Shown: positions 6,601 through 57,048, numbered from the stretch's first letter. The stretch is 64,000 bases of DNA from Hyphochytrium catenoides (GCA_900088475.1 FLMG01003327.1:4737-68736); one strand, 5' to 3'. Program-made: numbers and translations. The notes: generated by a model from the letters alone, not told the origin.

Positions 6601-9600
6601 TTCTTTTAGCTTCTTGACTAGTCTTCTGGCCAAGAACCCCCTCACTACCCTCTGAATCTCAATGGAGGCTGCATGCTTCTCTTTCAGTTGACGAAGGCCC
6701 TGTAGCGAAAGCGGTAGAGGGAGAGAGGGGAGAGCAAGAAGTTAGGGTTACTGCGAGGCCTAAGTATAACTTTCAGAAAAGCTACCCATAGCCCATAGCC
6801 GATGAAGCACAAGTCAAATGAGGGGTCTTCGTAGAATACGTAGACAGGCAAAAGCAGCAGAGGACTACACGTGCATAGTATCGAAGAATAGAAGCCCACT
6901 CAAAACCGGAAGGAAAGCGGGCTTTAACCTGCATGGCCTTGTGTCGACGAAAATGCTTCTGTACAATGGACGCGGCCCATTCTTGCTTCCGCATCTCCAG
7001 CATCGCCTTTTTCTCTTCTCCCCAATAGGCCTTATAGTCCGCAAAGTTTGTTCCTTCGCTATCTTCTTGATCTTTTGCCCAATAGCGTTTCACTTTTCTC
7101 CTCATCCTCTTCCTTTTGCGAGCCGAGGACTCCTCTGCATATTTCTGTGAAGATTAAGAAAAATTGTCAAAGCCTTGAGTATCACCTCTGGGACGTCTAA
7201 TGGAGCAAAAAAGATTGCAGAAAGTCTTTTTGATTGCACTAGAGAGACAAAGGTGAGCAAGTCATCTTCAAGAGAACAGACATCCTGAGTCGGGTGATCC
7301 ACCAGATGGAACTCTAGGGGCTGTTTCTCTCTTCCTCGGTCTCTCACGGTTCCACCTCCACGCGCGTACCTGGAGATTCTCTGGCCTAGCGGGCGGAGGA
7401 GTGTCTCTCTTTTCTCCGGTCACTTTATTCTCGAAAGTAAACCGCCCCAAAGCCTGGTTCCACACATGCTCCCAGTGGTCTTCGATGCCAAATCGGGCGA
7501 TAAGGTCCAAGGGCGGCTCCCAAGTATAGCTTTCCTGCTTGACATCGTAGTAGAAAGGAGTGTTTCCTGCGAAATGCAGGTAAGAGAGATGGTGATGTAT
7601 GGGGATGGGCACTTCAAGACCGGCCCAAAAGAGGGGTAATCAGCAGAAGACCATTGTAGGGATGATTGTGCTTACCGACGCCTTTGTCGATATACTTCCT
7701 ATAGCCATCACACTCAACGATGAAAGTAGAGAAGATTAGGTTCTTGTCCCACGCCTCCTTGGTACGTTGAGGTAGCTCTGCCGTCTCTTCCCCGTTCTCC
7801 CCTGGCTCCTGGGCTGGATCCTCCTCCACAAACTCCTCTGCAAGAGCAGGATTGGTGAACAAGAGGCGTAGAGAAGAGGAGAGGAGGGCCATTAGTTCTA
7901 CAGAGACTCTCACAGGTGAATAAGTTGCGTGAGCAGGGATACGTCGGTACTCTTCTCTAACAAGAGCCTCTTCTCTCTTGTCGAGGGTCGAAGCCTTTCT
8001 TTCTTGAGATGTGCGTTATCTCACCCTTTATCATCTTGATGATATCGCTATGCCTCTCCATCCTGGCGAGCCCCAGAGGAGTCTTTCTTAAGTAGTTCAT
8101 CTTCATCATATCCGCCCCGTACTCGAAGAGGAGGCGAAGAAGGTCTCGGTGACCGTTCGCAGCAGCATGATGTGCAGCCTTAATAAAAAGGCAACGGAGT
8201 AGGAACAGGGAAAGTGGAGAGGTCAGCCAAAAAGAGAGAAATGATAATCAGTAACTAAACAAGGGAGAAGGAAGCAAGAGGTACGGGTCATAGGAGAAAG
8301 GGGCAAGAACGGATGTTGTCAGGAGTAATAGTATACGAGACGCATGAAATACTCTAAGGATAAATGCATTGGAGGCTGGGCTAAGACCTGGCTCCCTAGC
8401 TTGTTCCTCTTAGCTGGGTCTGTCCCGTAAGTGAGAAGCATCTCCGCTAGTTCGTAGTTTCCCGCTTTGCAGGCGTACATCAAGGCAGTATCTCCGTCGC
8501 TGGGAACAAGCACATCTCTTAGAGTCCACGAATGTGACAGGCAAGCCCAGATGTTGAAAAGCCAATACATACTGAGCACAGAAAGGAAGATAATCTAAAT
8601 ATAAAGAGGAAGATAATTGGGACAGTCTCACTTGTCTGCCTCATTGACGTCCATCCCGTGATCTACCAGGAGATGTATGACCTCAGGGGTGCCACCGAGT
8701 ACACAGAAATGCAGTGGTGACCGCCCAGCTTGGTCACGTAAACTCAGCTTAGAGCCATTTGCTATCAGTTGTGTGGCCATCTAAGAAGAATGTATCAGGT
8801 AGAAGGGTCCATCAATTTCAAGGAAACATGGCAGGAGATCAAAAGAGAAGAAAAGAGTTGCGCTTCGACGAGCTGACGCTATTCAGAAAGGGCACTTCAA
8901 AAGGAGTATTGAAGTCGCTTGCTCTAGGATCCAGAGTCCCGAGGGATAATAAGAGCAGTGGCAAGCAGTGACCTTGCACAGGATACAGACAACAAATTTA
9001 CCAACAGTCAAAGTTTTCGCTGCACATAGCTCCGAGGACAGTAACTGATGGCTAAAAGGCCAATGAAGTCTCACCTCCACTTGTCCCTCTGCTATTGCAT
9101 ACATCAGAGGGGTGCAGCCCTCCTTGTCTTGGATATTAATATCAGCAAGATGGGAACGTAGTAGGTCCATCATCAAGATGTTGCCTTGAGATGCAGCGAT
9201 ATGGGCAGCAGTTCCTTCCTCTGTGGCCGTGTCGTATCGCAAAGCAAGGCGTTCAATTGAAAACAGAAGGGCATTAGCAAAAATACGTGCCCGGGATGGT
9301 TGAAATGTGAAAGAGAAGCTCAGAGGCTTACCCTTATCTCTCATATCGACCGGCAAACCCAACTCCAGGAGAAGCTTGGCCACCTCATATTGGTCATTAT
9401 TGACCGTCACGTGCAGCAGCCCTAAGCCTTCCTTATTTAGCTTTACATAGGAGCGGAGAAAATCGAAAACGTAAGTGAATATGATCGATCAGAGAAGTTA
9501 TGGGTTGACGGTTCTGTCAAGGTATTATGAGTAACAGCGCTATGAAGAACAAGAGTCAGAACAGTCAGGGACCACTAATTAGAGCAATAGCACAGACATC

Positions 9601-27000: not shown

Positions 27001-27072
27001 GTCTCGGAGCAAGTTTACCAATCAACCAGAGACAATGTTGTTACGTGGACTATTACTTTCGTAAGCGTGGAC

Positions 27073-27364
27073 TTCCTGACAGTCGGGCCGTCTCCTCGGA
27101 GGTTAAGAAGGTGGTAAACGACGGATTCACCATCATTCTTAGAGAAAGATGAAAAGAGAGTAGAAGAAGTTCCTGACATTCGGGCCGTCTCCGGAGCTTA
27201 AGAAGGTGGTAAACGACGGATTCTTCACCATCATTCTTAGAGAAAGGTGAAAAGAGAGTAGAAGAACTTCCTGACATTCAGGCCTTCTCCTCCGGGGTTA
27301 AGAAGGTGGGTAACGACGGATTCACCATCATTCTTAGAGAAAGTTAAAAAGAGAGTAGAAGAAG
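27073..27364. repeat. Tandem repeat, 3 copies of a 97-98 bp unit
   Basis: Units start at TTCCTGAC (27073, 27170, 27268) and share TTAAGAAGGTGG.TAACGACGGATTC..ACCATCATTCTTAGAGAAAG..AAAAGAGAGTAGAAGAA with few substitutions/indels. Confidence 0.95.
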
Positions 27365-28464: not shown

Positions 28465-29658
28465 ATGAACGTGGCCAGATCTATAGCAAGAATCTCCTGC
28501 CGCCGCGGGGTGCCTAAGTCCGCGAGCAACCCTGTCCGAGCTGGCGCGCGTAGGCCAATTACCACTGCTGCTAAGGACTCCAACAAGGGTCGTGGCTTCA
28601 ACTGGCGGTAGGAACCGTGATTGATGACCAGCACTGCTTTTCTCCTAACGACACCAATCTGTTCTCCAGTACTGGACTGGGTGTTGCTGCGGCTGGACTC
28701 GGATGCGGAGGAACGATCGCTTTAGCTGCTGCAGAGCATGAGGGAGAGAGCGGCGTAGTTAGAATCTCGGTATATGACGTGGACCTGGGCAACAAGTACC
28801 CGGAAATAGTCCCCTGTTTCATCGAGGTGTCTCAGGGCTCCAGGAACAAGTATGAGTGGGACAATGAGCTTGGGTTTCTGAAGCTCGACCGCATCCTCCA
28901 CTCCGCTGTCTTCTATCCTCACAACTACGGCTTCATTCCACGCACACTTTGCGGCGATGGCGATCCCCTGGATGTCCTCATTATTGGTGGCGGTGCAATC
29001 CTGCCAGGTATGGCGCTGGCAGCTGGTCAAGGCCGTCTCCCTTCTATGCTACTCTCTACTTCCCGGCGTTGGCAGCCTCTCCTCTATGCCTCTTGGTTCA
29101 CCCTTACGCCTTGCTAAATCCTCCATGCCATGGTAGTGCTACCCATACCCTGTGTCGCTTATGTTTCCCTTACTTTTTTGTTATCTTTGCTAGTCTTGAA
29201 TTATTACGATTATCCTTTTGTCGCTTGTCCCTTGCCACCACCTCTTGGCATCGTGTCCTCCTCTAGTGGCGGTGCTGCTGTGCCTAACTCACTCTTCTGC
29301 AATCATCTGCGGTTGGGTGTTGCTTTGTTATTCAATAGGTTCCTGGGTAGATGCCCGTCCAATTGGGTACATGGTCATGGAGGACGAGAAGGGATTTGAT
29401 GAGAAGGTTCTGGCTGTCGCTTGCAAGGACCCACGTTATAACGACGTGCAAAGCCTGGATGACGTCCCAAGCCACACTCTGCAGGAAATCGCACAATTCT
29501 TTGAGACGTATAAGGCCCTAGAGAGAAAGAAGTGGGTCAAGGTGGGAGGCTGGAAGGGCACGAGAGACACGTACAAGCTGCTAGAGGAGACTCACAAGAA
29601 CTTCCTTGAGGCCAAGCAGACTTACAAGGAGGGCAACATCCCGTACTCAAAGAATTGA
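28465..29658 (+). CDS. ppa: Soluble inorganic pyrophosphatase (family I, prokaryote/plant type) with an N-terminal mitochondrial-type presequence (exons 28465-28607, 28670-29007, 29339-29658; 266 aa)
   Basis: [46 protein letters not shown] (DxDPxD motif), [23 protein letters not shown]. Arg-rich N-terminus [15 protein letters not shown]. Confidence 0.95.
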
Positions 29659-38900: not shown

Positions 38901-41900
38901 TAAGCTTTGAGTCTGCGCAGTGAAGTCCCAATTGCTTGCTTCGCGTCCCGTACTTACCCTGTTCTGATTGTGCTGATCTCCTCTTGGTAGCAAACGCACC
39001 AATGCCATCTCTTCATGAGATCTTTATTGATCCCTATGCTGTACGCAACCTGTCGCTGACGCTTGTCCGTCTTTTGCCCTCTTTCTTCCGCGCCCGTGGA
39101 ATTCTCCGTCGGTTCCCTTAATCTACGTCCCTACACTATATGTTTCTTCACTTGTCCCTCTTCGCCAGACCACTGCATGGGAGCTGCTGTACAATACTCG
39201 TTATTCCATCGTTTCGCTACTCTCGGATCTGCCTTTTCCATCATATCGTCTCTCGCAACCAGGAGCCGTCCTGCCTCCAGGGACGCGTCTATACCCACTT
39301 CTGCATTTAAAGCTTGGCAAAATCATTCATGCAGCAGCCTCAAAGGTTGGAATCTCCTTTTGTTTCAGGCGTATTACTTGTCATATGCATGCCTTTGCGA
39401 TTGCTTCCTCAGCAGAGGTTCTTACGTGTCTGAATCTGCCAGCCTTCAATATTAGATAATCCCCAGTTGCTTTTGCGGTTGCTGACTGCTCTGCATATTG
39501 TTGCTCACTAAGCCTGCCTCTTACGTTACTCACCTTCACAGGTCGGCCTCCCAGACTCGAAGAAGACCATCTTCCCTGGTCTTGCTGCTCTATTTAGGAG
39601 GTTTACCGAACAGTTCGCGCAGGAGCAGGTATATGAAAAATAGAGACTGCTAGACATAAAAGAGTTCGGGCTTCACATAGGAAGAAGGCGCAAGGACCGT
39701 AAGAGCAATTAACAGTGTGTATGTGGTGAGAACAAGAGATATGTAGCAGAGGGGCGGCTTACGATATAGGAGCTTGCCTCGTCTTCTAACACTTCCAGCA
39801 GCGAGGGTCCCCAAATTACGAGCTCGGGGAGGTACTGGTCCTCTCGCTCTACTGCCCCTTAGTGGAACTCTTCGGGCGCCAGGTCATGGAAGAAAATGTA
39901 AGCTAGCATCGTCATCTCCGTGGAGTATTCAGATGCGAATGCAACGATGTCATCGGCTTGTGCTACAACATCATCCTCTCCCTCATTACTTGCCTGTGTA
40001 TCAAGCCTTTCTGCACCTAGCGGTAGCCGCTTCTCAATTTTCGTTTGTCAATAATGGTCGCAGATACCTACGCTCAACCCACGTCTCGTGTGGAAGTTCT
40101 CGAGCCAGCGAGAAGAAGTTTTACCTCCGCATTCTCTTCCTCCAACACTCCTGCACTCTAAAGAGAGCCGCGCTTCTGGTGTCCTTGATGAGCAAGTGGT
40201 AGAAGGAGGAACTGAGCCGTCCGGAGTGGAAAGGGATGGCGAAGAAGACCATCCTGATCACTCAGAGAACGAGTTTGAAGATGAAGAGCTCCTCCTTCCA
40301 GGAGCCATCCCGGACTCGGAGACGGTGGGGGGACAACAGGTGAGGAAATAGAGTTAAAGGGTGCTTAACGAGACGAGCAGGGCGGCACTTAGAGTTCTTA
40401 ACGAAATGACTTGAAGTGTGAAAGATCGGTAGTCCACACGCGAAGACAAAGGAGAAGGTTCAGGATGCTCTATGAGCACCGGCGAAGAGGGACAGATCTT
40501 TGCAGAATTGGGTGAAGGTAACCTTTAAACATGCTAACACCCTTTCGATGCTAGCCTGCGCTCCCACTGGCTACTCAGGCTGATGAACAGATCAAACTTG
40601 AAGAGCAGCTGGAGGCACTTTCAAGGCGCACCGGTATGTTAGGGATTGAGATACTGGGAGAAAAGCGAGTTATGTGCCTGTATACCTGAATATGGCAGCG
40701 CCCAGATAGATGATAGCAGTAGCGGTTTATGCCTTAGCTGTGAATGGGTAAGACTCAAAACGTTTATCGCGACGAGTGAGATAAATGGCGAGAGGAGTCG
40801 CGAGGAGGGATAAAAAAGTAAAAGAGAATACTTCTTTGATTATCTACTCTTTGGTAGGAATGGACCTATCTTCCTCCAGCCCAGCCCGCCATACTTCTAG
40901 GAATCGTCGACGCCGCCGCGCAGCAATTAATCCTGTCTGGCTGACGGGACCCGAGAAAACCTATGATCACAGATCATGGAGCAGGTAAGTCCACCTAAAA
41001 GGATAAGTGAGAATGCTAGCTTAGCTAAAGAGAGAAAGGCAAACGGCCTAGAACAGCTGCATGTTGAGTGTAAACATGCTTGTTATCTACGACAGAGTCA
41101 AAGAAGAGATTGTAATGGGTTTGTGCTGTGCTCTGTCATGTCGCTTATAACCTTTACTCTGCTTAGAACACACGAATCATGGACCTTAGGCACAGACACA
41201 CGTGACCAGTTACGTGCTCACTCTTCAGCCGTCCGATGCATGGCTGTCAACTCGTCCGAGTCCCTGCTCCTCTCGGGTTCATCTATCGGAACAGTTCGAG
41301 TGTGGAAGCTGACGGTACGTCATCCTCCCATAAGTCTCAATGTGCTAGTATCCTATGCTTGTGCCCGAAGTGGGCTGCGCTCATGTGCTTGTTCTATGAA
41401 TATCTATACTTTAGGATTACCCTGTCTCCCTCGAGTATTCCTTCTACAGTCAGCGGGAGCCAGTGTCTGCCGTCTTTGCGCTTCCCGGAACCTCTCGTAT
41501 CGGTTCGTGCTCCCGCTCTAGGGTGCAGCTCTGGGATATCAAGACTCAGCAAGTAAAGGCTTTATCTCTTCTCAAACCGAATTCCTACCCTCTGATGTCA
41601 AACCTGATTTTCGTCTTGGCAGGCAATCTACCAGCTCAGGGAGCAAGGAGACTTTTTCACCTGCGCTAGTCCGGTGCCAGTAGGTTCAGTGGTGGGCCTG
41701 GGATCGGATGTCCTAGCAAGTCAAAATCAGGTGATGATCTCCCCAAGTCTATGTCATAAGCGACTACTTTCATACCGCTGCTATTATTTTCTGATATCCC
41801 TCTCTTTTTCTCCTCCTCCACTACCACTTTCTCTTCTCCTTAGGTCCTGGTGGCGGCATTGGATAAGGTCTCCTGCATTGACTTAAGAGTTCCGAGCAAC

Positions 41901-46586: not shown

Positions 46587-47891
46587 CTATGCCCTGCTTA
46601 CGTACTCCTTTCTCTCTGTATTCACGATAATAGTATCCCCCGTCTCGACAAAGGGTGGTACTTTGACCGTCACGCCATTGTCTAGCAGTGCAGGCTTGTG
46701 CACAGCCGTCACCGTCGCATTTTTGATAATAGCTTCAGTCCGCTACATGGCGAGAGACAAGAGCAATCAACACACACAGACAATCACACAGCTAATGGTA
46801 CCGGGATACAGGGAAAGACTTGGGGTTGGAGATTAAAGAGAGAGAGAGAGTGAGGGAGAGAACATGCCAACACCATAGTGGAGACGGCAAGCAGGAAACA
46901 GGGTAGATGACCCTACCTGCACAACTGCCTTGATAGTGTCCGGAATGGTGATCTTGAAAGGTTGTCCCTTGTAGTTAAGCACCCTTACTTGCATCCCGTC
47001 GGTTAGGAACTGTGCTTTATCGCCTAACATCCCTACGTCAACCTCCACCTAGTAAAGAACGTAGGCGTTGCGCGGGACAAGGGTAACATGGAAAGTGAGA
47101 GAGCCACAATAGTGAGTCCGGCAGGGATAAGACAGTGTGAAAGACTCAAGACTCCAGGACAAATAAAGGAGTGAGGAGTAATAGCCTCAAGAGTTAGGGG
47201 AAACATAATCGACAAGTCGAGGGAACAAGCGAAAGAGGGTGAGAGAAGGAAGACAGGAAGAGAAGGAGAACAAAGAAGAGGGGACCAAAGAGAGAGAGGA
47301 AAGGAAGAGAGAGGATTCAAGAGAGACGGGGGAGAAGGGATTTCTTCTCTTTCCATCTCCAGGCCAACCTGTTCATAGGTGTTGGGCTCCATCAGCACAA
47401 GTTTCTTTCCCTCCACGTAGAGAACCTGATACGTCGTAGGATCTTCAAGCGATACCTTCTCTACCGACTCCGCAGACCTAAACCGATGGTTAAGTTTACC
47501 GCCTGTCTTCTGATCCTTCAGCTCCACCTAAGAAGAAGGAGACAAGGTTTAGGCAACATAAATGGTTCATCGACAGTATGCCTATCCTGGTCAAGCCAGA
47601 CGGCAAGCTCTACCGCCATCATTCTTGTGAGGATAGCAAGCTGCATAGTGAAATCGAGGCAAGGAATACCTGCATGAAAGCGCCGCCTTTGCCTGGCTTG
47701 ACGTGCTGAGCTTTGACGACCTCATACGTCTTATCGTTCAGCTCTATGGTCATACCGATTCTCACTTGATTGCCTGTGATTGAAATATACCGAGCTGGTA
47801 TGGCCACCCCGAGTCTCCTCCCTGCCGGCAGCCCTGACCCACTCCATGGCCCACAGCCTTGGATCCCTCGGACAGCTAATCGGCGGATCAT
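46587..47891 (-). CDS. efp: Translation elongation factor P, organellar (probably mitochondrial) (exons 47891-47670, 47527-47369, 47048-46917, 46742-46587; 222 aa)
   Basis: HVKPGKGGAFMQVEL, NHRFRSAESVE, MEPNTYEQ, KPALLDNGVTVKVPPFVETGD..VNTERKEYVSRA*. Arg-rich, acid-free 35-aa presequence. Confidence 0.95.
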
Positions 47892-48503: not shown

Positions 48504-50920
48504 ATGGCTCAGCAGGGCATACAGTAAGTGATGGCTTGGACTAAGGGTTTGCTGACGGAATACGGGCAAGAGGAGGAAAAAGAAGTAATCCGCGAAGAAA
48601 GAGAAGAGTTGGGGTCAAACAAATATAGAAGTGAGAGGAGGGACTAAGGCAAAGACGATGGAGCTGACAATAGAAGGCGATATTAGAGACAGAAAGCGAC
48701 AACACAGGGGGCCCATAAATAACCAGAGAAATGAGCTATCGGTGATAGAGCTGATGGGGTCATAGGTCTAACATTACTCTCTCATATCTGATCAACTCTA
48801 TAATAAGGCGGAAGAGGAAATGGGATCAGCCTGGAGTTTTACCGGCAACCTACGCGCAGGTAGCAGCTACCACGGTGATGCTATCTAACAAAGGAGTGCT
48901 GAAGGGAGACGAGCCAGATGTATTCACCATGGATTATGACATCAACAATGTAGGCAACAGGTAAGGGCATCCGCGCGGGCAGAGGAGGACATACCGCCAT
49001 TCCGAAGGCTGCGAAGTAGCCAAACAAGGCTGAACTGACAACAAGAACACCCACAGGGAGAAAGAGAAAAGAGAGAGGGAGGGGAAAAGAGGATGCAGCC
49101 CAGTGAAGAGGAAGGGAATGTGTTGAAACTAAGAGAACAACTTCCCTGTCGCCCTCCGTCCGAGAGCTTATGGCAGCCCACTCTTTCTCATCTTTTCTAC
49201 CCCTCACACCTTTGCTCTTTCCAGGCACATTCTCACGAAACGCGAGACCCACGATCGCATCAAGGAAGAGACAGGTGCCGCCCTTGTGGTGCGCGGCAGG
49301 TAATAGACTTGTGCAGCTGAGAAAGGTCGTCCATAAAGAGACAATAACGAAGGCAAAGTACCCGTCAGGGGTTGAGAGTTAGGAATATTAGCGGTCGCCA
49401 TGGATCCATGTATACTAGCGGAAAAGTTCTAGGTTATGCTGGATGGTGTTGCTGAGAGAGAGGAGGCAAACTTAGAGTTCCCACCTCCTGTTCACACTTC
49501 AATGCCTTTCCCAGGTTCAAGCCTCCTGGAGCTTCGGACCCTGCTCCCTCAGAGCGGCCGCTGTTTCTTCATGTCACAGCCGAAACCCAAGAAGCGTTGA
49601 ATAATGCAGCTACCTTGATAAGGAAGATAACGGAGATGGGCGCAGCAGCCTTTGGTGGTGAGTACTCTCTGCTCTGGGCCCTCTTCCTGCTTCCCTCTTT
49701 AAAACTCTCTGCTCCATGTGGTCCTTGTGCTATAGAATAAAGATGCAATTCTAGTGTCTCAGGCTCTCCTTCGCCCTGCCGCGCTATGTCTGTTGCGTAG
49801 TATCCCTCCCAATTCCCTTTGGAACTCCTTATTCCTTTTCCCACTTTTCTTTACCTAAAAGACTTCCCCAAGTCCTTTCTTGCTATCTTGCATTGCTATA
49901 TCTTAGTGACCGTTGCCTCCTGTATCGTGAAGTGCGTACTGCTGATATCTTCGTGCGCTTCTCACTAAGTAGATCTTTCTTCATTCGCCGCTCTTTGTCG
50001 GGATATCCCTTCTAGGCGGGAATGGAGGACGGATTGCAGCAGCTGAACCTCATAACACCTCGTCTGGCTCCCGATACCCATCCCCTCGCGCTCCCGGCGG
50101 ACGTCAGCAATGCACCATATACATGGGCATAGAGAACGAGCCTGTCTTCAAGCTCAAGCAGCGGCTGGTGGGAACGAAAGGGGCCTATCTGAAGTATATA
50201 ACTATGCTTACAGGAGCGAGAGTGCAAATCAGAGGCTTGACGTCAGGACACTTAGGTAAAACATGAGGTGGATACATCTGAGAGGTTGTTTAGGAGTGAA
50301 TCACGCATAGCAGGACGTGCCTGGCAAGCGTTTCATTTCGATTCTTCTTGGTTAGCAAACTCGTTCCAGATCTGTTTATCTTCTCATCCTTCGTTCTTAA
50401 CCCTGTTAGTTAGAAATCTCCTCTGTGGGTGGCTGCCACTGGTTCTTTGTTGCTCAACTGCCTTTATTGTGCTCAGTGCCATGGAGCTCTGGTCGTGGTG
50501 TTGCCTAGATTACAACTCCGCTTTCGGCTCTTGCGTAGAACCACCTTATAACCAAGAGGCACCAGAGCCTTTGCACCTGCATGTGACTTGCAATTCAGCA
50601 GAGGGTTTCCGAGAAGCTCGTGCGTTAGTGGAGAGCTTGGTCGAGACCGTCCGGCAGGACTATCGAGAATGGCATACAAAGTTTGGCGTCACACCTCCCA
50701 TCCTCCCAGACCTGTACAACCCCCACGGTATGTCTCCCCGCTCTCTTCTCAAGATCCTTTCTCCCTACGGCCTATCTTGCCCGGATTGAGTCTTTCTGCC
50801 ACCTCTGCAGCAATATCTCATCGGGATGGCGCAACTAAGAACAAGATATCTCTGTCCATTATTATAGGCCAGGCTCCTCATTCTGGCCAAGAAGGCCAAC
50901 ATGGCAACTGGCGGCAGTGA
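48504..50920 (+). CDS. KHDC4: KH-domain protein, KHDC4/BLOM7(RIK)-like splicing-associated RNA-binding protein (multi-exon)
   Basis: Spliced QRKRKWDQPG; DYDINNVGNRHILTKRETHDRIKEETGAALVVRGRF...ERPLFLHVTAET; LVGTKGAYLKYITMLTGARVQIRG..SG..EP...QEAPEPLHLHVT. These form two KH-like domains in the KHDC4 arrangement. Confidence 0.85.
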
Positions 50921-51262
50921 AGATTCTATCGTTTGACGGCTTTTCTGTTGGCGGGTTCTAAACATTCCTCCTCGTTTCCTCTGCCCGCTTTACAAGCTCG
51001 TTCGCTCGTTCCCATCTCAGCCACTTGCCACCTCTTGCAAGAGATATCTCAGGGGACGGAAAGATGGCAAGAATATCTTCCCCTGATAAATAGATTGGAG
51101 GCCCCGAGAGGAAGTGAAAGCTTAGAAGTAGGAACGAGCCCTCAGTTCAGCCTCAGGATCGCTTGGCTGCCAAGATGGGAAGAGACAGTAGTACAATAGT
51201 GGAGGTGGAAGCGGCTACTCCCGTGGTAAGGGATAACCAGATTATGTAGATAAAAGCGCAAC

Positions 51263-52970
51263 TTATATTTTAGAAGCCGCCCACAAGGCCAGCTTATAGC
51301 CGTACTTCACCGTCGATTGAAGGGATCCTGGAAGGGACTGCTTGAGGCCCTACTCAGATAAAGATCATGATTGAGAGCGCCAGAGGAACGGCGGTCAATG
51401 GGGCGGTAGGGACGAGGGAGACTGAAAAGATAACCTAGCAATAAAGTCTCGCCACTTACCTCTCCTTCTGCCTGCTCGGTGATGGACTGCAGATCCATAC
51501 CGACCTCCTTATCTCGGTGGGCTTTGAACATCTAAAAGTCGGTTGAAAGACGGGAAAAAAGCAATGAGCACTTTGCTAGACGAGCCCGTTCTCACCTCTC
51601 TTTCCTCAAGATCGCACCTTCCTCTGCGGAGGCCCTTCCTCTTTGAAAGCTTGGCAGCGAGATCTCTATTTCCGACTCACCTCTTTCAGTTCCTGCTCCT
51701 CTCCGTATTGGCTGTGTATCTCTCTGATTTGGTCGTTGTAGTACTCGCTTACTGCGCTTCTAACACCAGCTTCCACCGCCTGTGTCACCTGTGGACCCAG
51801 TAAACCTGAAACGCTACCTGCGCATTGAAGTTGGACGACAGTGAGACCCAGCATTTACAGAAGTAGAGACAGAGAAAGACACTTTGGCAGCTGACGCCGC
51901 CACCACCTGTGCAAGACAGGTAGAGCCAATTGTTCTTGACTATTGCCCAATACTCTCCGCTCCCTTATCTCGTCGTCTCTTTCCTCTCTTGATTAAAGAG
52001 CTAGTATTGATTCCCCTCTCACCTAGCACTGCGGTTCCTGCCTCTAATACCGGTAGAAGAGCGGAGGGTCGTACTCCTCGATCCCTAAGGACATCCTCGA
52101 TTCTATCCAGGTACAAAGGAGACCCAGAGCTAGGCTGTGTGAAGAGTTCAGTCACGAGAGTAGGAGGGTACACCATTTAGCAAGAGAGACAACATAGAAA
52201 AAGCTTCAGAGGTAAACGGAACAGTCAGACTGTGGAGGCAATCGAGCCATTGATGGGAGCACACCTGAGCTACCTCTGGAATTGTACCGAGGTAATCTGT
52301 CTTGCCCTGATAGGTGCAGACGACGTGTGTAAGAGAGCGAACGCTGAAGACGAGGACGAGCATAGGGAAGTGAACCCGAAGAGCAGGCAAAGAGAAGAGA
52401 GCAAAGGTAAGGCATAGAGCAGAGATTTAGCCAGGTTCCACTCAATCTAAGAAGGGCAGGCTGCCACCAAACTTAGTCATAATAACCTAGAGTCTACTGG
52501 TGCCCTTCCGCTGAGGCCAAAGGATGCAGTTTACCTGAGCTTCTGCTGCTTGAAGAGTGAGGACCTCCGCCGCGTGTGAGGAGCGGATCATCTCTTCCAG
52601 CTCCTCTCTCCTTGCTCTCTTCTGGCGGAGTTCCTGTATCGAATCCACCACCACCTCCGGAGCAAGGCGCTCAGATTCCGTTTGCTGGGTTTGCTTGCTC
52701 TGCTGCAGAGAGGTAGGGAGAGGAGGTTGGTCCCAACAAGTGACAGATGAGCCAAAGGCCATTCCAAACAGAGAGAAGTGAGACTGGAGCTTAACGTTAA
52801 ACGACAGAATGTAGCGCGTGAGAACCTGTTTCCGCCTTTCTACCTACATTTGGCCTAACTATCTTTCGCATCGGATTCTCATCCTGAGCACCTGTCCACC
52901 CAAGGGACCGAAAGCCCCTTCGTGCAGGAGTTAAAGACCCAAATAACCGAGAACTTCTTCTAGATAACAT
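51263..52970 (-). CDS. COQ7 (demethoxyubiquinone hydroxylase, ferritin-like fold) homologue with a degenerate di-iron site (7 exons: 52970-52848, 52702-52535, 52306-52265, 52134-52023, 51817-51681, 51531-51460, 51349-51263; 246 aa)
   Basis: Colinear with COQ7: MIRSSHAAEV..AAEAQ (IIRVDHAGEY..YAGQ), GVRPSALLP (RVRPTVLMP), LGSVSGLLG (LGAGTALLG), EYYNDQIRE (HYNNQIRT), HRDKE (FRDEE), VKYGYKLALWAASKI* (IQAGCRVAIYLSERL*). Presequence MLSRRSSRLFGSLTPARRGFRSL. Confidence 0.82.
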
Positions 52971-53583
52971 TGTATATAAAGACCAGCCGCCGAGGACTGC
53001 CTTATACTCTCACGGAGCTCAAACGGCAGCTCTGGAGAACTCTGAGACCTATACCTCAGCCCCTCAATCGCTGCCAGAGACGCAATGATATCGGGAAAGC
53101 ATACGCAGATTCTTCAGAAGAGATGAGAACCGAAAATGGACGTTAGCGGCCATTAAATCAGCCTAGCCGTTACCCAAACAGGGTAAGCCTGCAATGGGAA
53201 GGGAAAGTAGCCGTTGGCGCAGGTTGGTCGTTAGGAAGAGCGGGCTGCTGAGAGAGTAACAATGTTTCCTAGTTGGACCAAACGTCAGAGTGAACCTGTG
53301 AGGTTGGTGACAGTGCGTCTCTCCTCCAGAGTGGTAGGAGCTGAGACAGATGCTCCACCGAGTAGATGTGTAAGGTGTGCGAGTAGATAGGCGCGAGTAA
53401 GGTGTTCGTCGTCCTCCCTTGCCGCTTGTGGTCTGCCTTTGGCTATTAAGTGTGTTGGGATTCCGAGGTGGCTCCAGACCTGACGCATCACAGCCCCCCG
53501 AGACTAGAACATCGCGAAGCGGGGGGCAGTAAGGTGACAGCACCACCACTGAGTACTCCAGGGCCTCAGAATAGAGTTCAGCA

Positions 53584-54703
53584 ATGGCTCAGTGTCCTCA
53601 ATGCTGGACAGGGACATGTACACGGCACCGCAACCAGGACAGCGGCAGAGGGCTGCAGCAGAAGGTCCAGTCAACCGTCAAGAACCCAGCAGAGACCCTG
53701 AAAAAGATGTATGACCAGCTAGTAGCACCTCAGCTCGCCAAGCTAGAGAAATTGGAGCAGGCTGCCAAGTCGGAGGCACAGAACGAAGAGGGACATGAGG
53801 TGTACAAGAAGGTAGGGAACGCCTGTGACACTGACTGCATTCAGACGGTCAGATTAGTAAAGGCTAATGCCACTTACGTTCTGTTTTATCATTGTACAGA
53901 AAATAGACAAAGAGAGAAAGAAAATTCAAGAGAAAGGGCTTTCGAAGCGCAAGATGTCCTCAAAGGAGCTCAAGCTACTTCAGTCCGGTCTGAATGCACA
54001 GAGTGTCTCCATGCTAGCTCAAGATGACACGGACAGTGAGGGCGACCGTCGGAAGAGGAAAAAGTAGGGTCTTACTTGATTCCTGTCCCTACCTGGTTTG
54101 CTCTCTCTCTTATCTGTAGACCAGCTTTGTCTCAAATCTCTGTCCTATCTACTGGCTTTAGATTTTTAAGGTGCCTCAGTGCGGCGGCATCTGCTCATCC
54201 TATCTTCCTTTTCCCGTTCGTTCATTCTCGAAAACACCCTCCTCATCCCTCTTAAAAGCTCTTCGCTCTCGTGCTTTCTAGCAATTCACCGTACTGATGG
54301 TAACCACATTCGCAGGAAGAAAGAGTCTTCAAGATCTAAGAAGGATTCCAAGAAAAAGAAGAGCAAGGAAGAACGAAAGAAGAAGTCGAAAAGAAAGAAA
54401 CGCAGTCGGGCCGACGAGTCAGAGGAGGATAGTTCCAGTTCTTCTGACTCTGAAGGAAGCACTACTGACGGTTCCTCAAACGAGAAGCGGCAGAGGTCGC
54501 GCAAAAAGGAACGAGAACGAAGTCCCCCATTCAAACGAGCTAGAGATAGAAGTAGAAGTCGAGATAGAGGCCGAAGTGATAGCAGGGAGAGGACAAGTCG
54601 ACGAAGTAGAAGCCGAGATAGAGACAGAGGTCGAGACCAGCGTAGCGAAAGCAGAGAGAGAAGAGTCAGACGAAGTAGAAGTCGTGACCGAAGCCGCAGT
54701 TGA
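53584..54703 (+). CDS. SR/RS-rich nuclear protein with an N-terminal CxxCx4CxxH motif (exons 53584-53811, 53900-54063, 54316-54703; 259 aa)
   Basis: MAQCPQCWTGTCTRH, then a coiled coil, a Lys-rich NLS-like block and a C-terminal RSRSRDR repeat tail. Junctions are GT-AG and in frame. Confidence 0.75.
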
Positions 54704-55825
54704 AAGTAGACAGGAAGGGCAAGTGCTTGGCGAGGTGATCGGCTTTTATTGATGAGCTGGAAGGACTTATTATATGGTATCCATAAACGCCCTCCAGAAC
54801 CTCTATCAGGCCTCTCTATCGCCAAGAAACACAACTTCCTTCTAGAAGAAGCCGAGTAGAACACACCCACCGCTGTCTACGTTGCGAAGCAGGATGCCCA
54901 GAAAGTATGGACAGTCACGTCGCCGAACTCTCCAACACCATGCTTGAAGAGGTAGACATCATGGCAAACCACGCGCCGTCGTATAACCTCTACACTTGAT
55001 CAGCAGCAGCTTACCACCAACGTACGAAGCAGCGGCCAAACGTCTGCAAGAACTTTCATACCTCGCGCTTTATACCTTGAGCTCCGCCTGACATTATGGT
55101 ACAGGAAACTCTATCATGAAGATCCAAGAATCAACAGAGGCACTTCCCCCACAGTTCGCCTATGGACGTTACCGGCCTTCTGTGTGAAAGTTCCTGAGAT
55201 ATTTGAATTTTAGCATCTTGATTATTTCTTTGGGCGGTGCTGAGGTTGCAAAGTGGGTTGTGCTTTCAAAAAGTTTTTCGGTCACAGTGACCTGTCTCTC
55301 CTGCCCCGTCTGCCATATTATTACTTTCTGATCCTATTCGTAAGAGGAGTAATAGTGGTACATCATTGTGTATACTACTAAATCCATCACCAGGTCCAGC
55401 AGGCAGCACTTTGTCCGCTCAGTTCGCGGGCCGTCATTGGGTCATTGCCAAGGCGAAGGCACTCGCCATCATCTCATACTTTCGCTGGTCTTGATGTCGG
55501 TCTGCGGGACCAATAGCGGCATGTGAAGTCACAGAGACTCGTCTTTACGAATGCTTAGAGAGATAGGGGCCAGAGCGTGCATAAACAGCTACATCCCGCT
55601 TTTTCTCATGGTCGTTCGATCTTCCCATTCAGGCCCAGTGAAGACGCTTATAGTGCAGTAACAGTGCTAGCGTATTCTCGTCTGGAGGACGCTGGAAGCG
55701 GTGGCATAACAGTTTCTCATGCCCTTCTCGACGAGGCCTCCTGCTCGATCTCATTGATGGAAATCTGGATGGGGACCGAAGCGCAACTCCAGATCAAGGT
55801 CGACAGCTAATAGCTCTCAAGCAAG

Positions 55826-57048
55826 ATGATCATCCCAAAGTGTCCCATAATGACAGCGAAGAGCTTGAGTTTGATAAGTGCTGGCGCTGCGCCCCGTCTC
55901 CTCGGTGCAGCGCGTAACTTATTCAAGGAGTCCGCTGCGATTTTAGCTAGGAAGAAGCACACTCTAGTTCTTATCCGACATGGTGAAAGTGTTTACAATG
56001 ATCAGAAGCGATTTACTGGCTGGGACGATGTGCCCTTGAGTCCCAAAGGTAGCGTCACATTTACGGAGTCAACTTGCGCCGGGATGAGTTCTCACATTTT
56101 ACGCTCTTTGCTCTAGGTCATAGAGAGGCAGAAGCTGGGGCCAAAGCCTTGGCAAAACTAAATTTCAAGTTTGATGTGTGCTACACGTCACTTCTTTCTC
56201 GGGCTCAGACTACGCTATGGTATATCTTGCTTGAAACTGGGCAGCTCTCAGTGCCTGTGAAGACCTCTTTCAGACTGAATGAGAGGCACTATGGAGCTCT
56301 AACTGGGCAAAAGAAGGCGGATGCGGCGAAAGAATACGGTGAAGAGACAGTGCTGCAATGGCGTCGGGCTTACTCGGTCTGTCCACCTCTAATGGAAGAA
56401 TCTGACCCAAAATGGAGCGGTAATGACAGCAGGTAGAGCCAGACACTCATTCTTTAATTGTCTCTTTGGACGTCGTTTCCCATTTTGGGAGCTTTTTGAC
56501 CCGATCTCTCCTTCAACGATCATTTGGTTCGTAGGTATAGACAGTTGGTGCCCCCAGGAGAATTCCCCAAAGGAGAATCGCTAGAAATGGCGGGTCGCCG
56601 TCTTCTTCCTCTCTGGGTTGAGGAGGTTTCAGAGGACCTAAAAGATGGGAAGACTGTGTTGGTCTCTGCGCATAACAATATTCTGAGGGCCCTTATCGTG
56701 CTCCTAGAGGGAGCTTCACCAGAGGATATTTTCCAGATTAAGTTGCCCACGGCAGTCCCGCTAGTGTATCATCTTGATGAAGCCCTCTCTCCTCTCAACC
56801 AAAAGGATGAAGTCACCGGACTGAGAGCAAGCTTTCTTTGGCCGTCGGATACAAAGGACGTGAACCAATTATATGAACCTCGTCACCAGCTGATGTCTGC
56901 GGACTTCAACCATAAGGAAGTAGCGTTTGTTCCTTTAAGGACGTGGGCTCCTTGGCAGCCACGGAGTGCCACAAGGAAGAGTGTTTCCTCCAGAGATCTC
57001 TCGACTCAGCTTGGCATCGGCGCCAGTTTTCCCAATAGGGTTTCATAG
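55826..57048 (+). CDS. gpmA: 2,3-BPG-dependent phosphoglycerate mutase (dPGM) with an N-terminal mitochondrial-type extension (exons to 56048, 56117-56432, 56535-57048; start 55826 or 55850)
   Basis: [86 protein letters not shown]. Confidence 0.93.

What the first reader, a model, noticed from the sequence alone, without database searches (positions are those of the whole stretch)
51263..52970. Intact mitochondrial-type COQ7 homologue missing 4 of 6 di-iron ligands: candidate COQ7 pseudoenzyme
Seen: seven exons with canonical splice sites give an open 246-aa frame that aligns almost without gaps to the COQ7 core. Established: COQ7 binds its di-iron centre through E60, E90xxH93, E142 and E178xxH181 (human numbering). 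Here E60 (HAAE, codon 52565-52567) and E178 (RDKE) are kept. E90xxH93 reads SPLY (52122-52111), E142 is Arg (GVR, 51759-51761) and H181 is Met (EVGM, 51496-51498). An alternative exon 3/4 model (ITSVQFQR) also lacks ExxH. Non-ligand motifs (VRP..LLP, LLG, YNDQIR, C-terminal amphipathic helix) and the presequence are preserved. Inference: this is selection for the fold without catalysis, e.g. a scaffold, quinone-binding or regulatory subunit of the CoQ synthome, or a heterodimer partner of an active COQ7/COQ9.
Basis: partly seen in the sequence, partly recalled or inferred. Interest (0 to 1): 0.8.

Follow-up and report, generated by a model that had tools for sequence, protein, structure and literature searches.

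The report
Intact COQ7 homologue without iron site
This is an intact seven-exon nuclear gene for a mitochondrial-type relative of the coenzyme-Q hydroxylase COQ7 that has lost four of its six iron-binding residues, and the same kind of dead COQ7 is conserved under purifying selection in all sampled oomycetes, lineages reported to do this hydroxylation with the flavoenzyme CoqF.

Summary
Seven GT-AG exons (52970-51263, minus strand) give a 243-aa protein. It scores 96 bits, nearly end to end, against a profile built only from ligand-complete COQ7s; the best of 1000 shuffles scored 5 bits. The six di-iron ligand positions read E-S-Y-R-E-M instead of E-E-H-E-E-H. No ExxH exists in any minus-strand frame of the locus. 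Four to five intron positions and phases match Phytophthora and brachiopod COQ7 genes, which validates the exon model.

The gene is not an isolated oddity. All sampled oomycete proteins annotated as COQ7 are also degenerate (Q-E-A-K-E-F or H-E-S/N-K-E-D), and so is an uncultured marine protist transcript (Q-E-Q-Q-E-P). All 37 full-length canonical COQ7s compared keep all six ligands. Phytophthora orthologues evolve at dN/dS 0.09-0.24, and a modelled one keeps the human COQ7 fold.

A neighbouring pyrophosphatase gene is closest to chlorarachniophyte genes. Chlorarachniophytes and oomycetes are reported to use the flavoenzyme CoqF for this step.

My best reading is a non-catalytic COQ7 retained as a scaffold or COQ9 partner. 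That mechanism is inferred, not shown. I found no paper describing it.

The parts
52848..52970 (-). Exon 1 (41 aa). Holds the start codon and a presequence-like N-terminus.
   Evidence: It begins at the first ATG after an in-frame stop. The first 29 residues contain 6 Arg and no Asp or Glu. The donor is GTAGGT. Mitochondrial targeting is inferred from composition only.
52535..52702 (-). Exon 2 (56 aa). A lineage-specific charged linker followed by helix 1 with HAAE; the Glu equivalent to human E60 is kept at 52565-52567.
   Evidence: The phase-0 intron after this exon sits at the same alignment column as P. infestans intron 1.
52274..52306 (-). Exon 3 (11 aa, GKTDYLGTIPE). The least certain exon.
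   Evidence: GT-AG, with phase 0 on both sides. Its 3' boundary lies within one alignment column of a phase-0 intron in P. infestans and in Lingula COQ7. Skipping it would also keep the reading frame.
52023..52134 (-). Exon 4. SPLY replaces the E90xxH93 motif (Ser at 52120-52122, Tyr at 52111-52113). The conserved VRPSALLP segment lies at 52074-52051.
   Evidence: Pfam COQ7 hit at profile positions 50-77. Ligand columns. The exon ends in phase 1 inside a Gly codon, as in Phytophthora and Lingula.
51681..51817 (-). Exon 5. AGVR places Arg (51759-51761) at the E142 position. YYNDQIR lies at 51743-51723, with Tyr at the H148 position.
   Evidence: Pfam COQ7 hit at profile positions 80-122 with 20.3 bits. 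Aligns to human COQ7 residues 127-163. Residue table.
51460..51531 (-). Exon 6. RDKEVGM keeps the E178 equivalent (51505-51507) and has Met (51496-51498) at the H181 position.
51263..51349 (-). Exon 7. Encodes the C-terminal helix (alpha-6 equivalent) and the TAA stop.
   Evidence: Aligns to the C-terminus of the canonical COQ7 profile. The intron before it is within three columns of a phase-0 intron in Lingula.

Best explanation
The locus is an intact, intron-rich nuclear gene. The genome is probably that of a chlorarachniophyte-like rhizarian. The gene encodes a mitochondrial-type descendant of COQ7, the di-iron 5-demethoxyubiquinone hydroxylase, and this descendant can no longer assemble the di-iron centre. 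It is therefore a pseudoenzyme rather than a hydroxylase. It resembles, and in the ML tree groups with, a conserved set of ligand-degenerate COQ7 proteins found in all sampled oomycetes and in an uncultured marine protist. The literature reports that the C6-hydroxylation in these lineages is done by the flavoenzyme CoqF. The mechanism I think most likely is inferred, not shown. The protein keeps the COQ7 helical bundle, its hydrophobic membrane-facing channel and the RP(S/T) patch that contacts COQ9 in the human complex. It would then serve as a non-catalytic structural or lipid-access subunit of the CoQ biosynthetic complex, while CoqF supplies the chemistry. A basic residue at position 142 (Arg here, Lys in oomycetes) probably neutralises the remaining core carboxylates in place of the metal ions.
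For: These points are shown by tool results.
- Full-length homology to canonical COQ7: 96 bits against at most 5 bits for shuffles.
- The ligand columns read E-S-Y-R-E-M.
- Other residues invariant or nearly so in canonical COQ7 are also lost: Y67 to A, H148 to Y, W115 to L, C207 to Y, A63 to T, I66 to A.
- No ExxH exists in any frame of the locus.
- The ORF is intact across seven GT-AG exons, and its intron positions and phases are shared with Phytophthora and Lingula COQ7 genes.
- Thirty-four full-length oomycete proteins and P0007 are degenerate at the same columns, while all 37 full-length canonical proteins read EEHEEH.
- The window protein shares derived residues with every degenerate member at positions invariant in canonical COQ7: A140 to G and H148 to Y, plus I156 and K168.
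- In the ML tree the window falls on the degenerate side of a branch with 100/98 support.
- dN/dS is 0.09-0.24 among three Phytophthora genes and one metagenomic oomycete gene.
- P0007 is a spliced transcript from the Narragansett Bay metatranscriptome SRR1810206.
- The AlphaFold2 model of the P. infestans member has pLDDT 84, and its best PDB match is human COQ7 in the COQ7:COQ9 complex, with TM 0.81-0.86.
- Residues kept in the window, the oomycetes, P0007 and canonical COQ7 alike include R107-P108, P113, N150-R154, R175-D176 and E178. R107, P108 and T109 are COQ9-contact residues in the human structure (bioRxiv 10.1101/2021.11.15.468694).

From the literature: oomycetes and chlorarachniophytes carry CoqF (PMC8654299).

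On the source organism: the pyrophosphatase gene at 28.6 kb is closest (68-79% identity) to proteins of five chlorarachniophyte genera.
Against: - There is no expression data for this gene.
- No close relative was found, so selection in its own lineage is untested.
- The source genome could not be searched, so the presence of CoqF or COQ9 and the absence of a canonical COQ7 are not shown for this organism.
- The COQ9 contact residue R105 is Gly in the window protein and in P0007, and other interface positions vary.
- Plants keep COQ9 with no COQ7 at all, so a COQ7-like partner is not obligatory (PMC10385794, title and abstract only; PMC8654299).
- Toxoplasma lost both Coq7 and Coq9 (PMC13369981).
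- Common origin with the oomycete clade is not proven. An AU test does not reject placing the window protein with a canonical group (p = 0.215), long-branch attraction is possible, and the window keeps E60 and lost E90 whereas oomycetes did the reverse.
- The fold was modelled only for a homologue about 35% identical to the window protein, not for the window protein itself.
Confidence: 0.55

Rival explanations
1. The protein is a neofunctionalised COQ7 fold working outside CoQ ring modification. It might be a quinone or isoprenoid-lipid binding or sensing protein, or a subunit recruited into another mitochondrial complex. It would still be non-catalytic, but would not be a complex-Q scaffold.
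For: The hydrophobic character of the channel positions is largely kept while the chemistry is lost. Sequence evolution after ligand loss was strong, seen as long branches. Pfam scores are 41-52 bits for the oomycete proteins against 212 bits for a canonical one. The N-terminal extensions are lineage-specific.
Against: The segments conserved with canonical COQ7 include the COQ9-contact RP(S/T) patch. The family is seen only in lineages that still make CoQ. Nothing links it to another complex.
Confidence: 0.25
2. The protein is still an enzyme or metalloprotein, with a remodelled site or a new activity. It might be mononuclear, or use Tyr and Met in place of His.
For: E60, E178 and Y149 are kept, and Tyr stands at positions 93 and 148.
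Against: The replacement residues are not conserved between lineages. Position 93 is Y, A, S, N or Q, and position 181 is M, F, Y, D, P or I, so there is no common alternative ligand set. A cationic Arg or Lys sits at the E142 position in the bundle core. Y67 and H148 are also lost.
Confidence: 0.08
3. The gene is a decaying, unexpressed pseudogene in this genome that happens to be still open.
For: There is no expression evidence for this locus. No annotated protein matching it exists in the protein collections searched.
Against: All seven exons are open with canonical splice sites, and the ancient intron phases are preserved. The motifs that are conserved across the degenerate family and canonical COQ7 are intact. 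Homologues with the same type of loss are under purifying selection and are expressed. The ligand substitutions need two or three nucleotide changes each, so they are old, yet no stop codon or frameshift has accumulated.
Confidence: 0.07
4. The protein is a regulatory or heteromeric partner of a second, ligand-complete COQ7 encoded elsewhere in the same genome.
For: It cannot be excluded, because only 64 kb of the genome was available. Seventeen species with both CoqF and Coq7 are reported in PMC8654299.
Against: There is no second COQ7-like sequence in the window. None of the named oomycete hits is ligand-complete. Chlorarachniophytes are listed as CoqF carriers.
Confidence: 0.05

Closest known systems
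COQ7 / Clk-1 / Cat5, the mitochondrial di-iron 5-demethoxyubiquinone hydroxylase (Pfam PF03232; human structures 7SSS and 7SSP)
   Same: Homologous over the whole domain. The ancient intron positions are the same. It keeps the RP(S/T), LLG, YNDQIR and RD-E motifs, has a C-terminal helix and has a presequence-like N-terminus. The fold is retained in a clade member.
   Different: Four of the six iron ligands are replaced (S, Y, R, M). Y67, H148 and W115 are also replaced. It should not be able to hydroxylate DMQ.
Oomycete proteins annotated as 'ubiquinone biosynthesis protein COQ7' or '5-demethoxyubiquinone hydroxylase' (Phytophthora, Pythium, Peronospora, Plasmopara, Bremia, Aphanomyces, Saprolegnia, Achlya; P0008-P0036, P0059, P0065 and others)
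   Same: Both His ligands are lost. Position 142 is basic. The derived residues A140G, H148Y, I156 and K168 are shared. All four Phytophthora introns are shared. The window groups with them in the ML tree.
   Different: Identity is only about 35-39%. The window keeps E60 and lost E90, whereas oomycetes lost E60 and keep E90. The window protein has a longer N-terminal linker and two extra introns. There is no shared synteny. A single origin is not proven.
CoqF, the flavin-dependent C6-hydroxylase of plants, algae, apicomplexans and oomycetes (PMC8654299)
   Same: It performs the reaction that canonical COQ7 performs, and it occurs in the lineages that carry the degenerate COQ7.
   Different: It is an unrelated fold and cofactor. 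It is the presumed functional replacement, not a relative.
Pseudoenzymes derived from ferritin-like or other metalloenzyme folds, as a general class (from my own knowledge)
   Same: The catalytic and metal ligands are lost while the fold and the interaction surfaces are kept under purifying selection.
   Different: I found no described COQ7 pseudoenzyme in the literature searches.

Membership tests
COQ7 (PF03232) sequence family | Significant, colinear similarity over the whole COQ7 domain | tested here: met
   96.2 bits against an HMM of 37 canonical COQ7s, covering HMM positions 17-205 of 205; the best shuffle scored 5.2 bits. Exons 4 and 5 hit PF03232 colinearly. BLASTP to metazoan COQ7s gives about 30% identity over about 215 aa. 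The spliced protein could not be submitted to Pfam as one sequence.
COQ7 as an active di-iron hydroxylase | The six di-iron ligands: E60, E90xxH93, E142, E178xxH181 | tested here: not met
   The window reads E, S, Y, R, E, M. All 37 full-length canonical proteins read E, E, H, E, E, H. No ExxH occurs in any frame of the locus.
COQ7 as an active di-iron hydroxylase | Second-sphere and charge-transfer residues Y67, H148 and Y149, and the channel Trp W115 | tested here: not met
   The window has A, Y, Y and L. Canonical proteins have Y in 34/37, H in 37/37, Y in 37/37 and W in 36/37. The residue roles are taken from bioRxiv 10.1101/2021.11.15.468694.
COQ7 as an active di-iron hydroxylase | NADH-contact residues R51, R208, Y212 and R216 | tested here: inconclusive
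   The window has E, K, W and K. These positions also vary among canonical sequences.
COQ7 as an active di-iron hydroxylase | DMQ hydroxylase activity or rescue of a coq7 mutant | not testable with these tools
   This needs biochemistry or yeast complementation.
COQ7 fold (four-helix ferritin-like bundle plus alpha-3 and alpha-6) | Predicted structure superposes on human COQ7 | tested here: inconclusive
   Met for the P. infestans homologue: pLDDT 84, with 7SSS_E and 7SSP_E as top hits at TM 0.81-0.86. The spliced window protein has no reference form, so it was not modelled.
COQ7 as COQ9 partner | Conservation of the COQ9-contact patch (N98, M101, V102, R105, R107, P108, T109, V110, M112) | tested here: inconclusive
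   R107, P108 and S at 109 are conserved and P113 is kept, but R105 is Gly in the window and the other positions vary. Binding itself is not testable here.
Ligand-degenerate COQ7-like clade (oomycete type) | Loss of both His ligands, non-acidic residue at 142, and the shared derived residues A140G and H148Y | tested here: met
Ligand-degenerate COQ7-like clade (oomycete type) | Phylogenetic placement with the clade to the exclusion of canonical COQ7 | tested here: inconclusive
   The ML tree places it there with 100/98 support. The branches are long, and an AU test does not reject placement with a canonical group (p = 0.215).
Processed or decaying pseudogene | Frame disruptions, lost splice sites or lack of introns | tested here: not met
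   Seven open exons, six GT-AG introns, and ancient intron phases kept.

The most novel reading that the evidence does not exclude
A catalytically dead COQ7 arose once, early in the SAR lineages (stramenopiles and rhizarians), after CoqF took over C6-hydroxylation. It has been kept for hundreds of millions of years because COQ7 has a separable, essential non-catalytic role in the CoQ biosynthetic complex, holding or positioning COQ9 and extracting lipid intermediates from the membrane. Oomycete 'COQ7' annotations would then all describe a scaffold, not an enzyme.
Probability: 0.3. Interest if true: 0.75.

Novelty: new variant of a known kind. Interest (0 to 1): 0.66.

Why it matters
COQ7 is studied as a catalytic and regulatory hub of coenzyme Q synthesis, and it is a human disease gene. 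A naturally occurring, long-conserved COQ7 without its iron site would be a natural separation-of-function allele. It would show which part of COQ7 biology does not need hydroxylation, such as complex assembly, COQ9 partnership or membrane access.

It also qualifies the picture of mutually exclusive CoqF and Coq7 (PMC8654299). Some CoqF lineages did not lose COQ7 but disarmed it.

In practical terms, proteins annotated as '5-demethoxyubiquinone hydroxylase' or 'COQ7' in Phytophthora and other oomycetes are probably misannotated as active enzymes. This matters for pathway reconstructions in these crop pathogens.

Tried and rejected
- Single exons against the PDB. Only exon 5 found human COQ7, weakly (E = 1.2). 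Exons 2 and 4 found nothing meaningful.
- Exhaustive search of 1.84 billion representative proteins with exon 5. It gave six hits and no self-match. P0001 and P0002 are repetitive, unrelated proteins that match by chance.
- An alignment of exon pieces stacked by MAFFT (A1) was unusable and discarded.
- A word-index search with P0003 alone found only one further protein.
- No synteny exists between the window and the oomycete or protist loci.
- Two scans of metagenome contigs for closer relatives found nothing, and one call failed on query length. dN/dS could therefore not be measured in the window's own lineage.
- No Rfam or tRNA features helped to identify the organism.
- The supplementary table of PMC8654299 that lists species with both enzymes is not held.
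- The UniRef name 'COQ9 domain-containing protein' for P0020 is not supported, because only PF03232 matches.
- I did not model the window protein. A spliced product has no reference form, and I did not type long sequences.
- Shared introns are not proof of a common origin with oomycetes, because most are also present in Lingula canonical COQ7. Only the intron at alignment column 145 is specific to the window and Phytophthora.

Full report
**1. What is in the sequence**

On the minus strand between 52970 and 51263 I rebuilt a seven-exon gene:

| Exon | Coordinates |
|---|---|
| 1 | 52970-52848 |
| 2 | 52702-52535 |
| 3 | 52306-52274 |
| 4 | 52134-52023 |
| 5 | 51817-51681 |
| 6 | 51531-51460 |
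| 7 | 51349-51263 |

- All six introns are GT-AG and 110-228 nt long. The product is 243 aa.
- The start codon is the first ATG after an in-frame stop.
- The first 29 residues hold six Arg and no acidic residue. This looks like a mitochondrial presequence, but that is an inference from composition only.
I did not reconstruct its model, so the source of the difference is unknown.

**2. Is it COQ7, and are the ligands really gone?**

- Exons 4 and 5 alone hit Pfam PF03232 in colinear order, at 11.9 and 20.3 bits.
- Exon 5 alone aligns to human COQ7 residues 127-163 with Arg opposite E142.
The spliced protein scores 96.2 bits over HMM positions 17-205 of 205. The best of 1000 shuffles scores 5.2 bits.
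- In a 121-row alignment the six ligand columns of canonical COQ7 read E-E-H-E-E-H in all 37 full-length canonical rows. The window protein reads E-S-Y-R-E-M.
- No ExxH motif exists in any of the three minus-strand frames of 51200-53050. No alternative splicing within the locus can rebuild the site.
- Functional residues are taken from the human COQ7:COQ9 structure paper (bioRxiv 10.1101/2021.11.15.468694). Further residues invariant or nearly so in canonical COQ7 are also replaced: Y67 to A, H148 to Y, W115 to L, A63 to T, I66 to A and C207 to Y. Y149 and the mostly hydrophobic channel positions are kept.

**3. Independent validation of the exon model**

I mapped the introns of P. infestans, P. 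nicotianae and P. cinnamomi homologues and of Lingula anatina canonical COQ7 onto the same alignment.

| Gene | Intron columns (phase) |
|---|---|
| Window | 145 (0), 203 (0), 252 (1), 373 (0), 460 (0) |
| P. infestans | 145 (0), 202 (0), 252 (1), 373 (0) |
| Lingula | 202 (0), 252 (1), 294 (2), 373 (0), 463 (0) |

- The gene therefore descends vertically from the ancestral eukaryotic COQ7 gene.
- The small exon 3 is bracketed by conserved intron positions.
- Only the intron at column 145 is specific to the window and Phytophthora.

**4. It is one of a family**

- An exhaustive search with exon 5 found short ORF fragments with Lys or Gln at the E142 position. Their contigs led to two sources. 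One is an oomycete-like locus (L004). The other is a protist gene, P0003, whose relative P0007 is 75% identical to it.
- P0007 is a full-length 156-aa ORF from run SRR1810206, a Narragansett Bay eukaryotic metatranscriptome. It is spliced exactly at the conserved intron after LKE, so it is an expressed mRNA.
- A profile search returned the 'COQ7' proteins of Phytophthora, Pythium, Globisporangium, Peronospora, Hyaloperonospora, Plasmopara, Bremia, Aphanomyces, Saprolegnia, Achlya and Thraustotheca as best named hits.
- Their ligand columns are Q-E-A-K-E-F/Y in Peronosporales and Pythiales, and H-E-S/N-K-E-D in Saprolegniales. P0007 reads Q-E-Q-Q-E-P. No ligand-complete oomycete protein appeared among the hits.
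- Pfam scores for the oomycete proteins are 41-52 bits, against 212 bits for a canonical protein.

**5. Selection, fold and conserved surfaces**

- Nei-Gojobori dN/dS among three Phytophthora genes and L004 is 0.09-0.24, with dS 0.6-1.2. This is clear purifying selection on ligand-less proteins.
- An AlphaFold2 model of the P. infestans protein has pLDDT 84 and pTM 0.77. Its two best PDB matches are human COQ7 chains 7SSS_E and 7SSP_E, with target-normalised TM 0.81-0.86. Generic ferritins and Dps proteins follow far behind.
- Columns identical in the window, the oomycetes and at least 85% of canonical COQ7 are R54, H57, R107, P108, P113, G123, Y149, N150-R154, L167, R175, D176 and E178. P0007 shares all of these except H57 and Y149.
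- R107, P108 and T109 belong to the COQ9-contact patch in the human complex. However, R105 is Gly in the window protein.
- The window shares derived residues with all degenerate members where canonical COQ7 is invariant: A140 to G and H148 to Y. It also shares I156 and K168.

**6. One origin or several?**

- In an ML tree of 89 rows (LG+C20), the window protein, P0007 and the oomycetes lie on one side of a branch with 100/98 support, and all canonical sequences lie on the other.
- The branches are long. An AU test does not reject grouping the window protein with a canonical subgroup (p = 0.215).
- The window keeps E60 and lost E90, whereas the oomycetes did the opposite.
- A single ancient origin is favoured by the shared derived residues, but parallel decay after replacement remains possible.

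**7. Source organism and pathway context**

- The window is eukaryotic: 47-52% GC, many short introns, and housekeeping neighbours.
- The pyrophosphatase exon at 28617-29117 is 79% identical to a cluster that contains a Bigelowiella natans protein and 77% identical to Amorphochlora. Norrisiella, Lotharella and Partenskyella follow at 68-70%. The next named taxa are stramenopiles at 62-66%.
- I therefore take the source to be a chlorarachniophyte or a close rhizarian relative, and not B. natans itself. This rests on one gene.
- Xu et al. 2021 (PMC8654299) report CoqF in Chlorarachniophyceae, including B. natans, and in oomycetes. They also report that eukaryotes generally keep only one of CoqF and Coq7, with 17 exceptions.
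- Toxoplasma lost both Coq7 and Coq9 (PMC13369981).
- I could not test the source genome for CoqF, COQ9 or a second COQ7. The window holds no second COQ7-like sequence.

**8. Interpretation**

*Shown:*
- The gene is intact and is COQ7-derived.
- It lacks the di-iron site.
- Homologues with the same kind of loss are conserved, expressed, and modelled to fold like COQ7.

*Inferred:*
- The protein is mitochondrial.
- It is non-catalytic.
- It is kept for a structural, COQ9-associated or lipid-access role in CoQ synthesis while CoqF performs the hydroxylation.
- Arg or Lys at position 142 compensates the charge of the remaining core carboxylates.

The rivals, with my probabilities:

| Rival | Probability |
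|---|---|
| A role outside CoQ synthesis | 0.25 |
| A remodelled metal site or new activity | 0.08 |
| A silent pseudogene | 0.07 |
| A partner of a second, active COQ7 | 0.05 |

**9. Novelty**

Full-text searches found no paper describing a ligand-less COQ7 or a COQ7 pseudoenzyme. I searched COQ7 with pseudoenzyme, with Phytophthora, with oomycete, and with CoqF and stramenopiles. The oomycete proteins are in public databases but are named as active enzymes. I rate this a new variant of a known kind.

Noticed in passing
window 28617-29658 (+): A two-exon soluble inorganic pyrophosphatase gene (Pfam PF00719, 81 and 97 bits). Its best named relatives are chlorarachniophytes: a cluster containing a Bigelowiella natans protein at 79% and Amorphochlora at 77%. 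This is my only evidence for the source organism.
   Followed up: partly
window 46833-47891 (-): A multi-exon gene for an elongation factor P-like protein (EFP_N and EFP OB domains) with an Arg-rich N-terminus. It is presumably organelle-targeted.
   Followed up: no
window 55826-57048 (+): A multi-exon histidine-phosphatase or dPGM-type phosphoglycerate mutase gene (His_Phos_1 hits in three consecutive ORFs).
   Followed up: no
window 54179-54870 (both strands): An Arg/Ser- and Lys-rich low-complexity ORF resembling an SR protein, about 1.2 kb upstream of the COQ7-like gene. Long ORFs on both strands here are a composition effect.
   Followed up: no
window 27071-27363: A tandem repeat of a 97-bp unit, three copies at 88% identity, just upstream of the pyrophosphatase gene.
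   Followed up: no
window 8883-9410 (-), 40976-41521 (+), 50268-50789 (+): ORFs with ankyrin, WD40 and KH (KHDC4/BBP-like) domains. The KH gene is convergent with the COQ7-like gene.
   Followed up: no
L004 3875-5869; L009 2080-4369; L010 2135-4390: In the oomycete loci the degenerate COQ7 gene sits in a conserved order: LSM protein, COQ7-like, dynein light chain. A protein kinase with a faint ABC1 signal lies upstream. None of this synteny is present in the window.
   Followed up: partly
P0020 / P0251 (Peronospora belbahrii): UniRef names this 218-aa degenerate COQ7 a 'COQ9 domain-containing protein'. Pfam finds only PF03232 (51.9 bits), so the name looks like an annotation error.
   Followed up: yes
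L011 3001-3959 (P. cinnamomi): The annotated first intron of the P. cinnamomi homologue can be mapped only with a GC donor instead of GT.
   Followed up: no
P0002 (1101 aa): A repetitive, apparently bacterial surface-type protein carries three copies of a 'KAISEFYNDMV' segment that matched exon 5 (47 bits). I judged this a chance or compositional match unrelated to COQ7.
   Followed up: no
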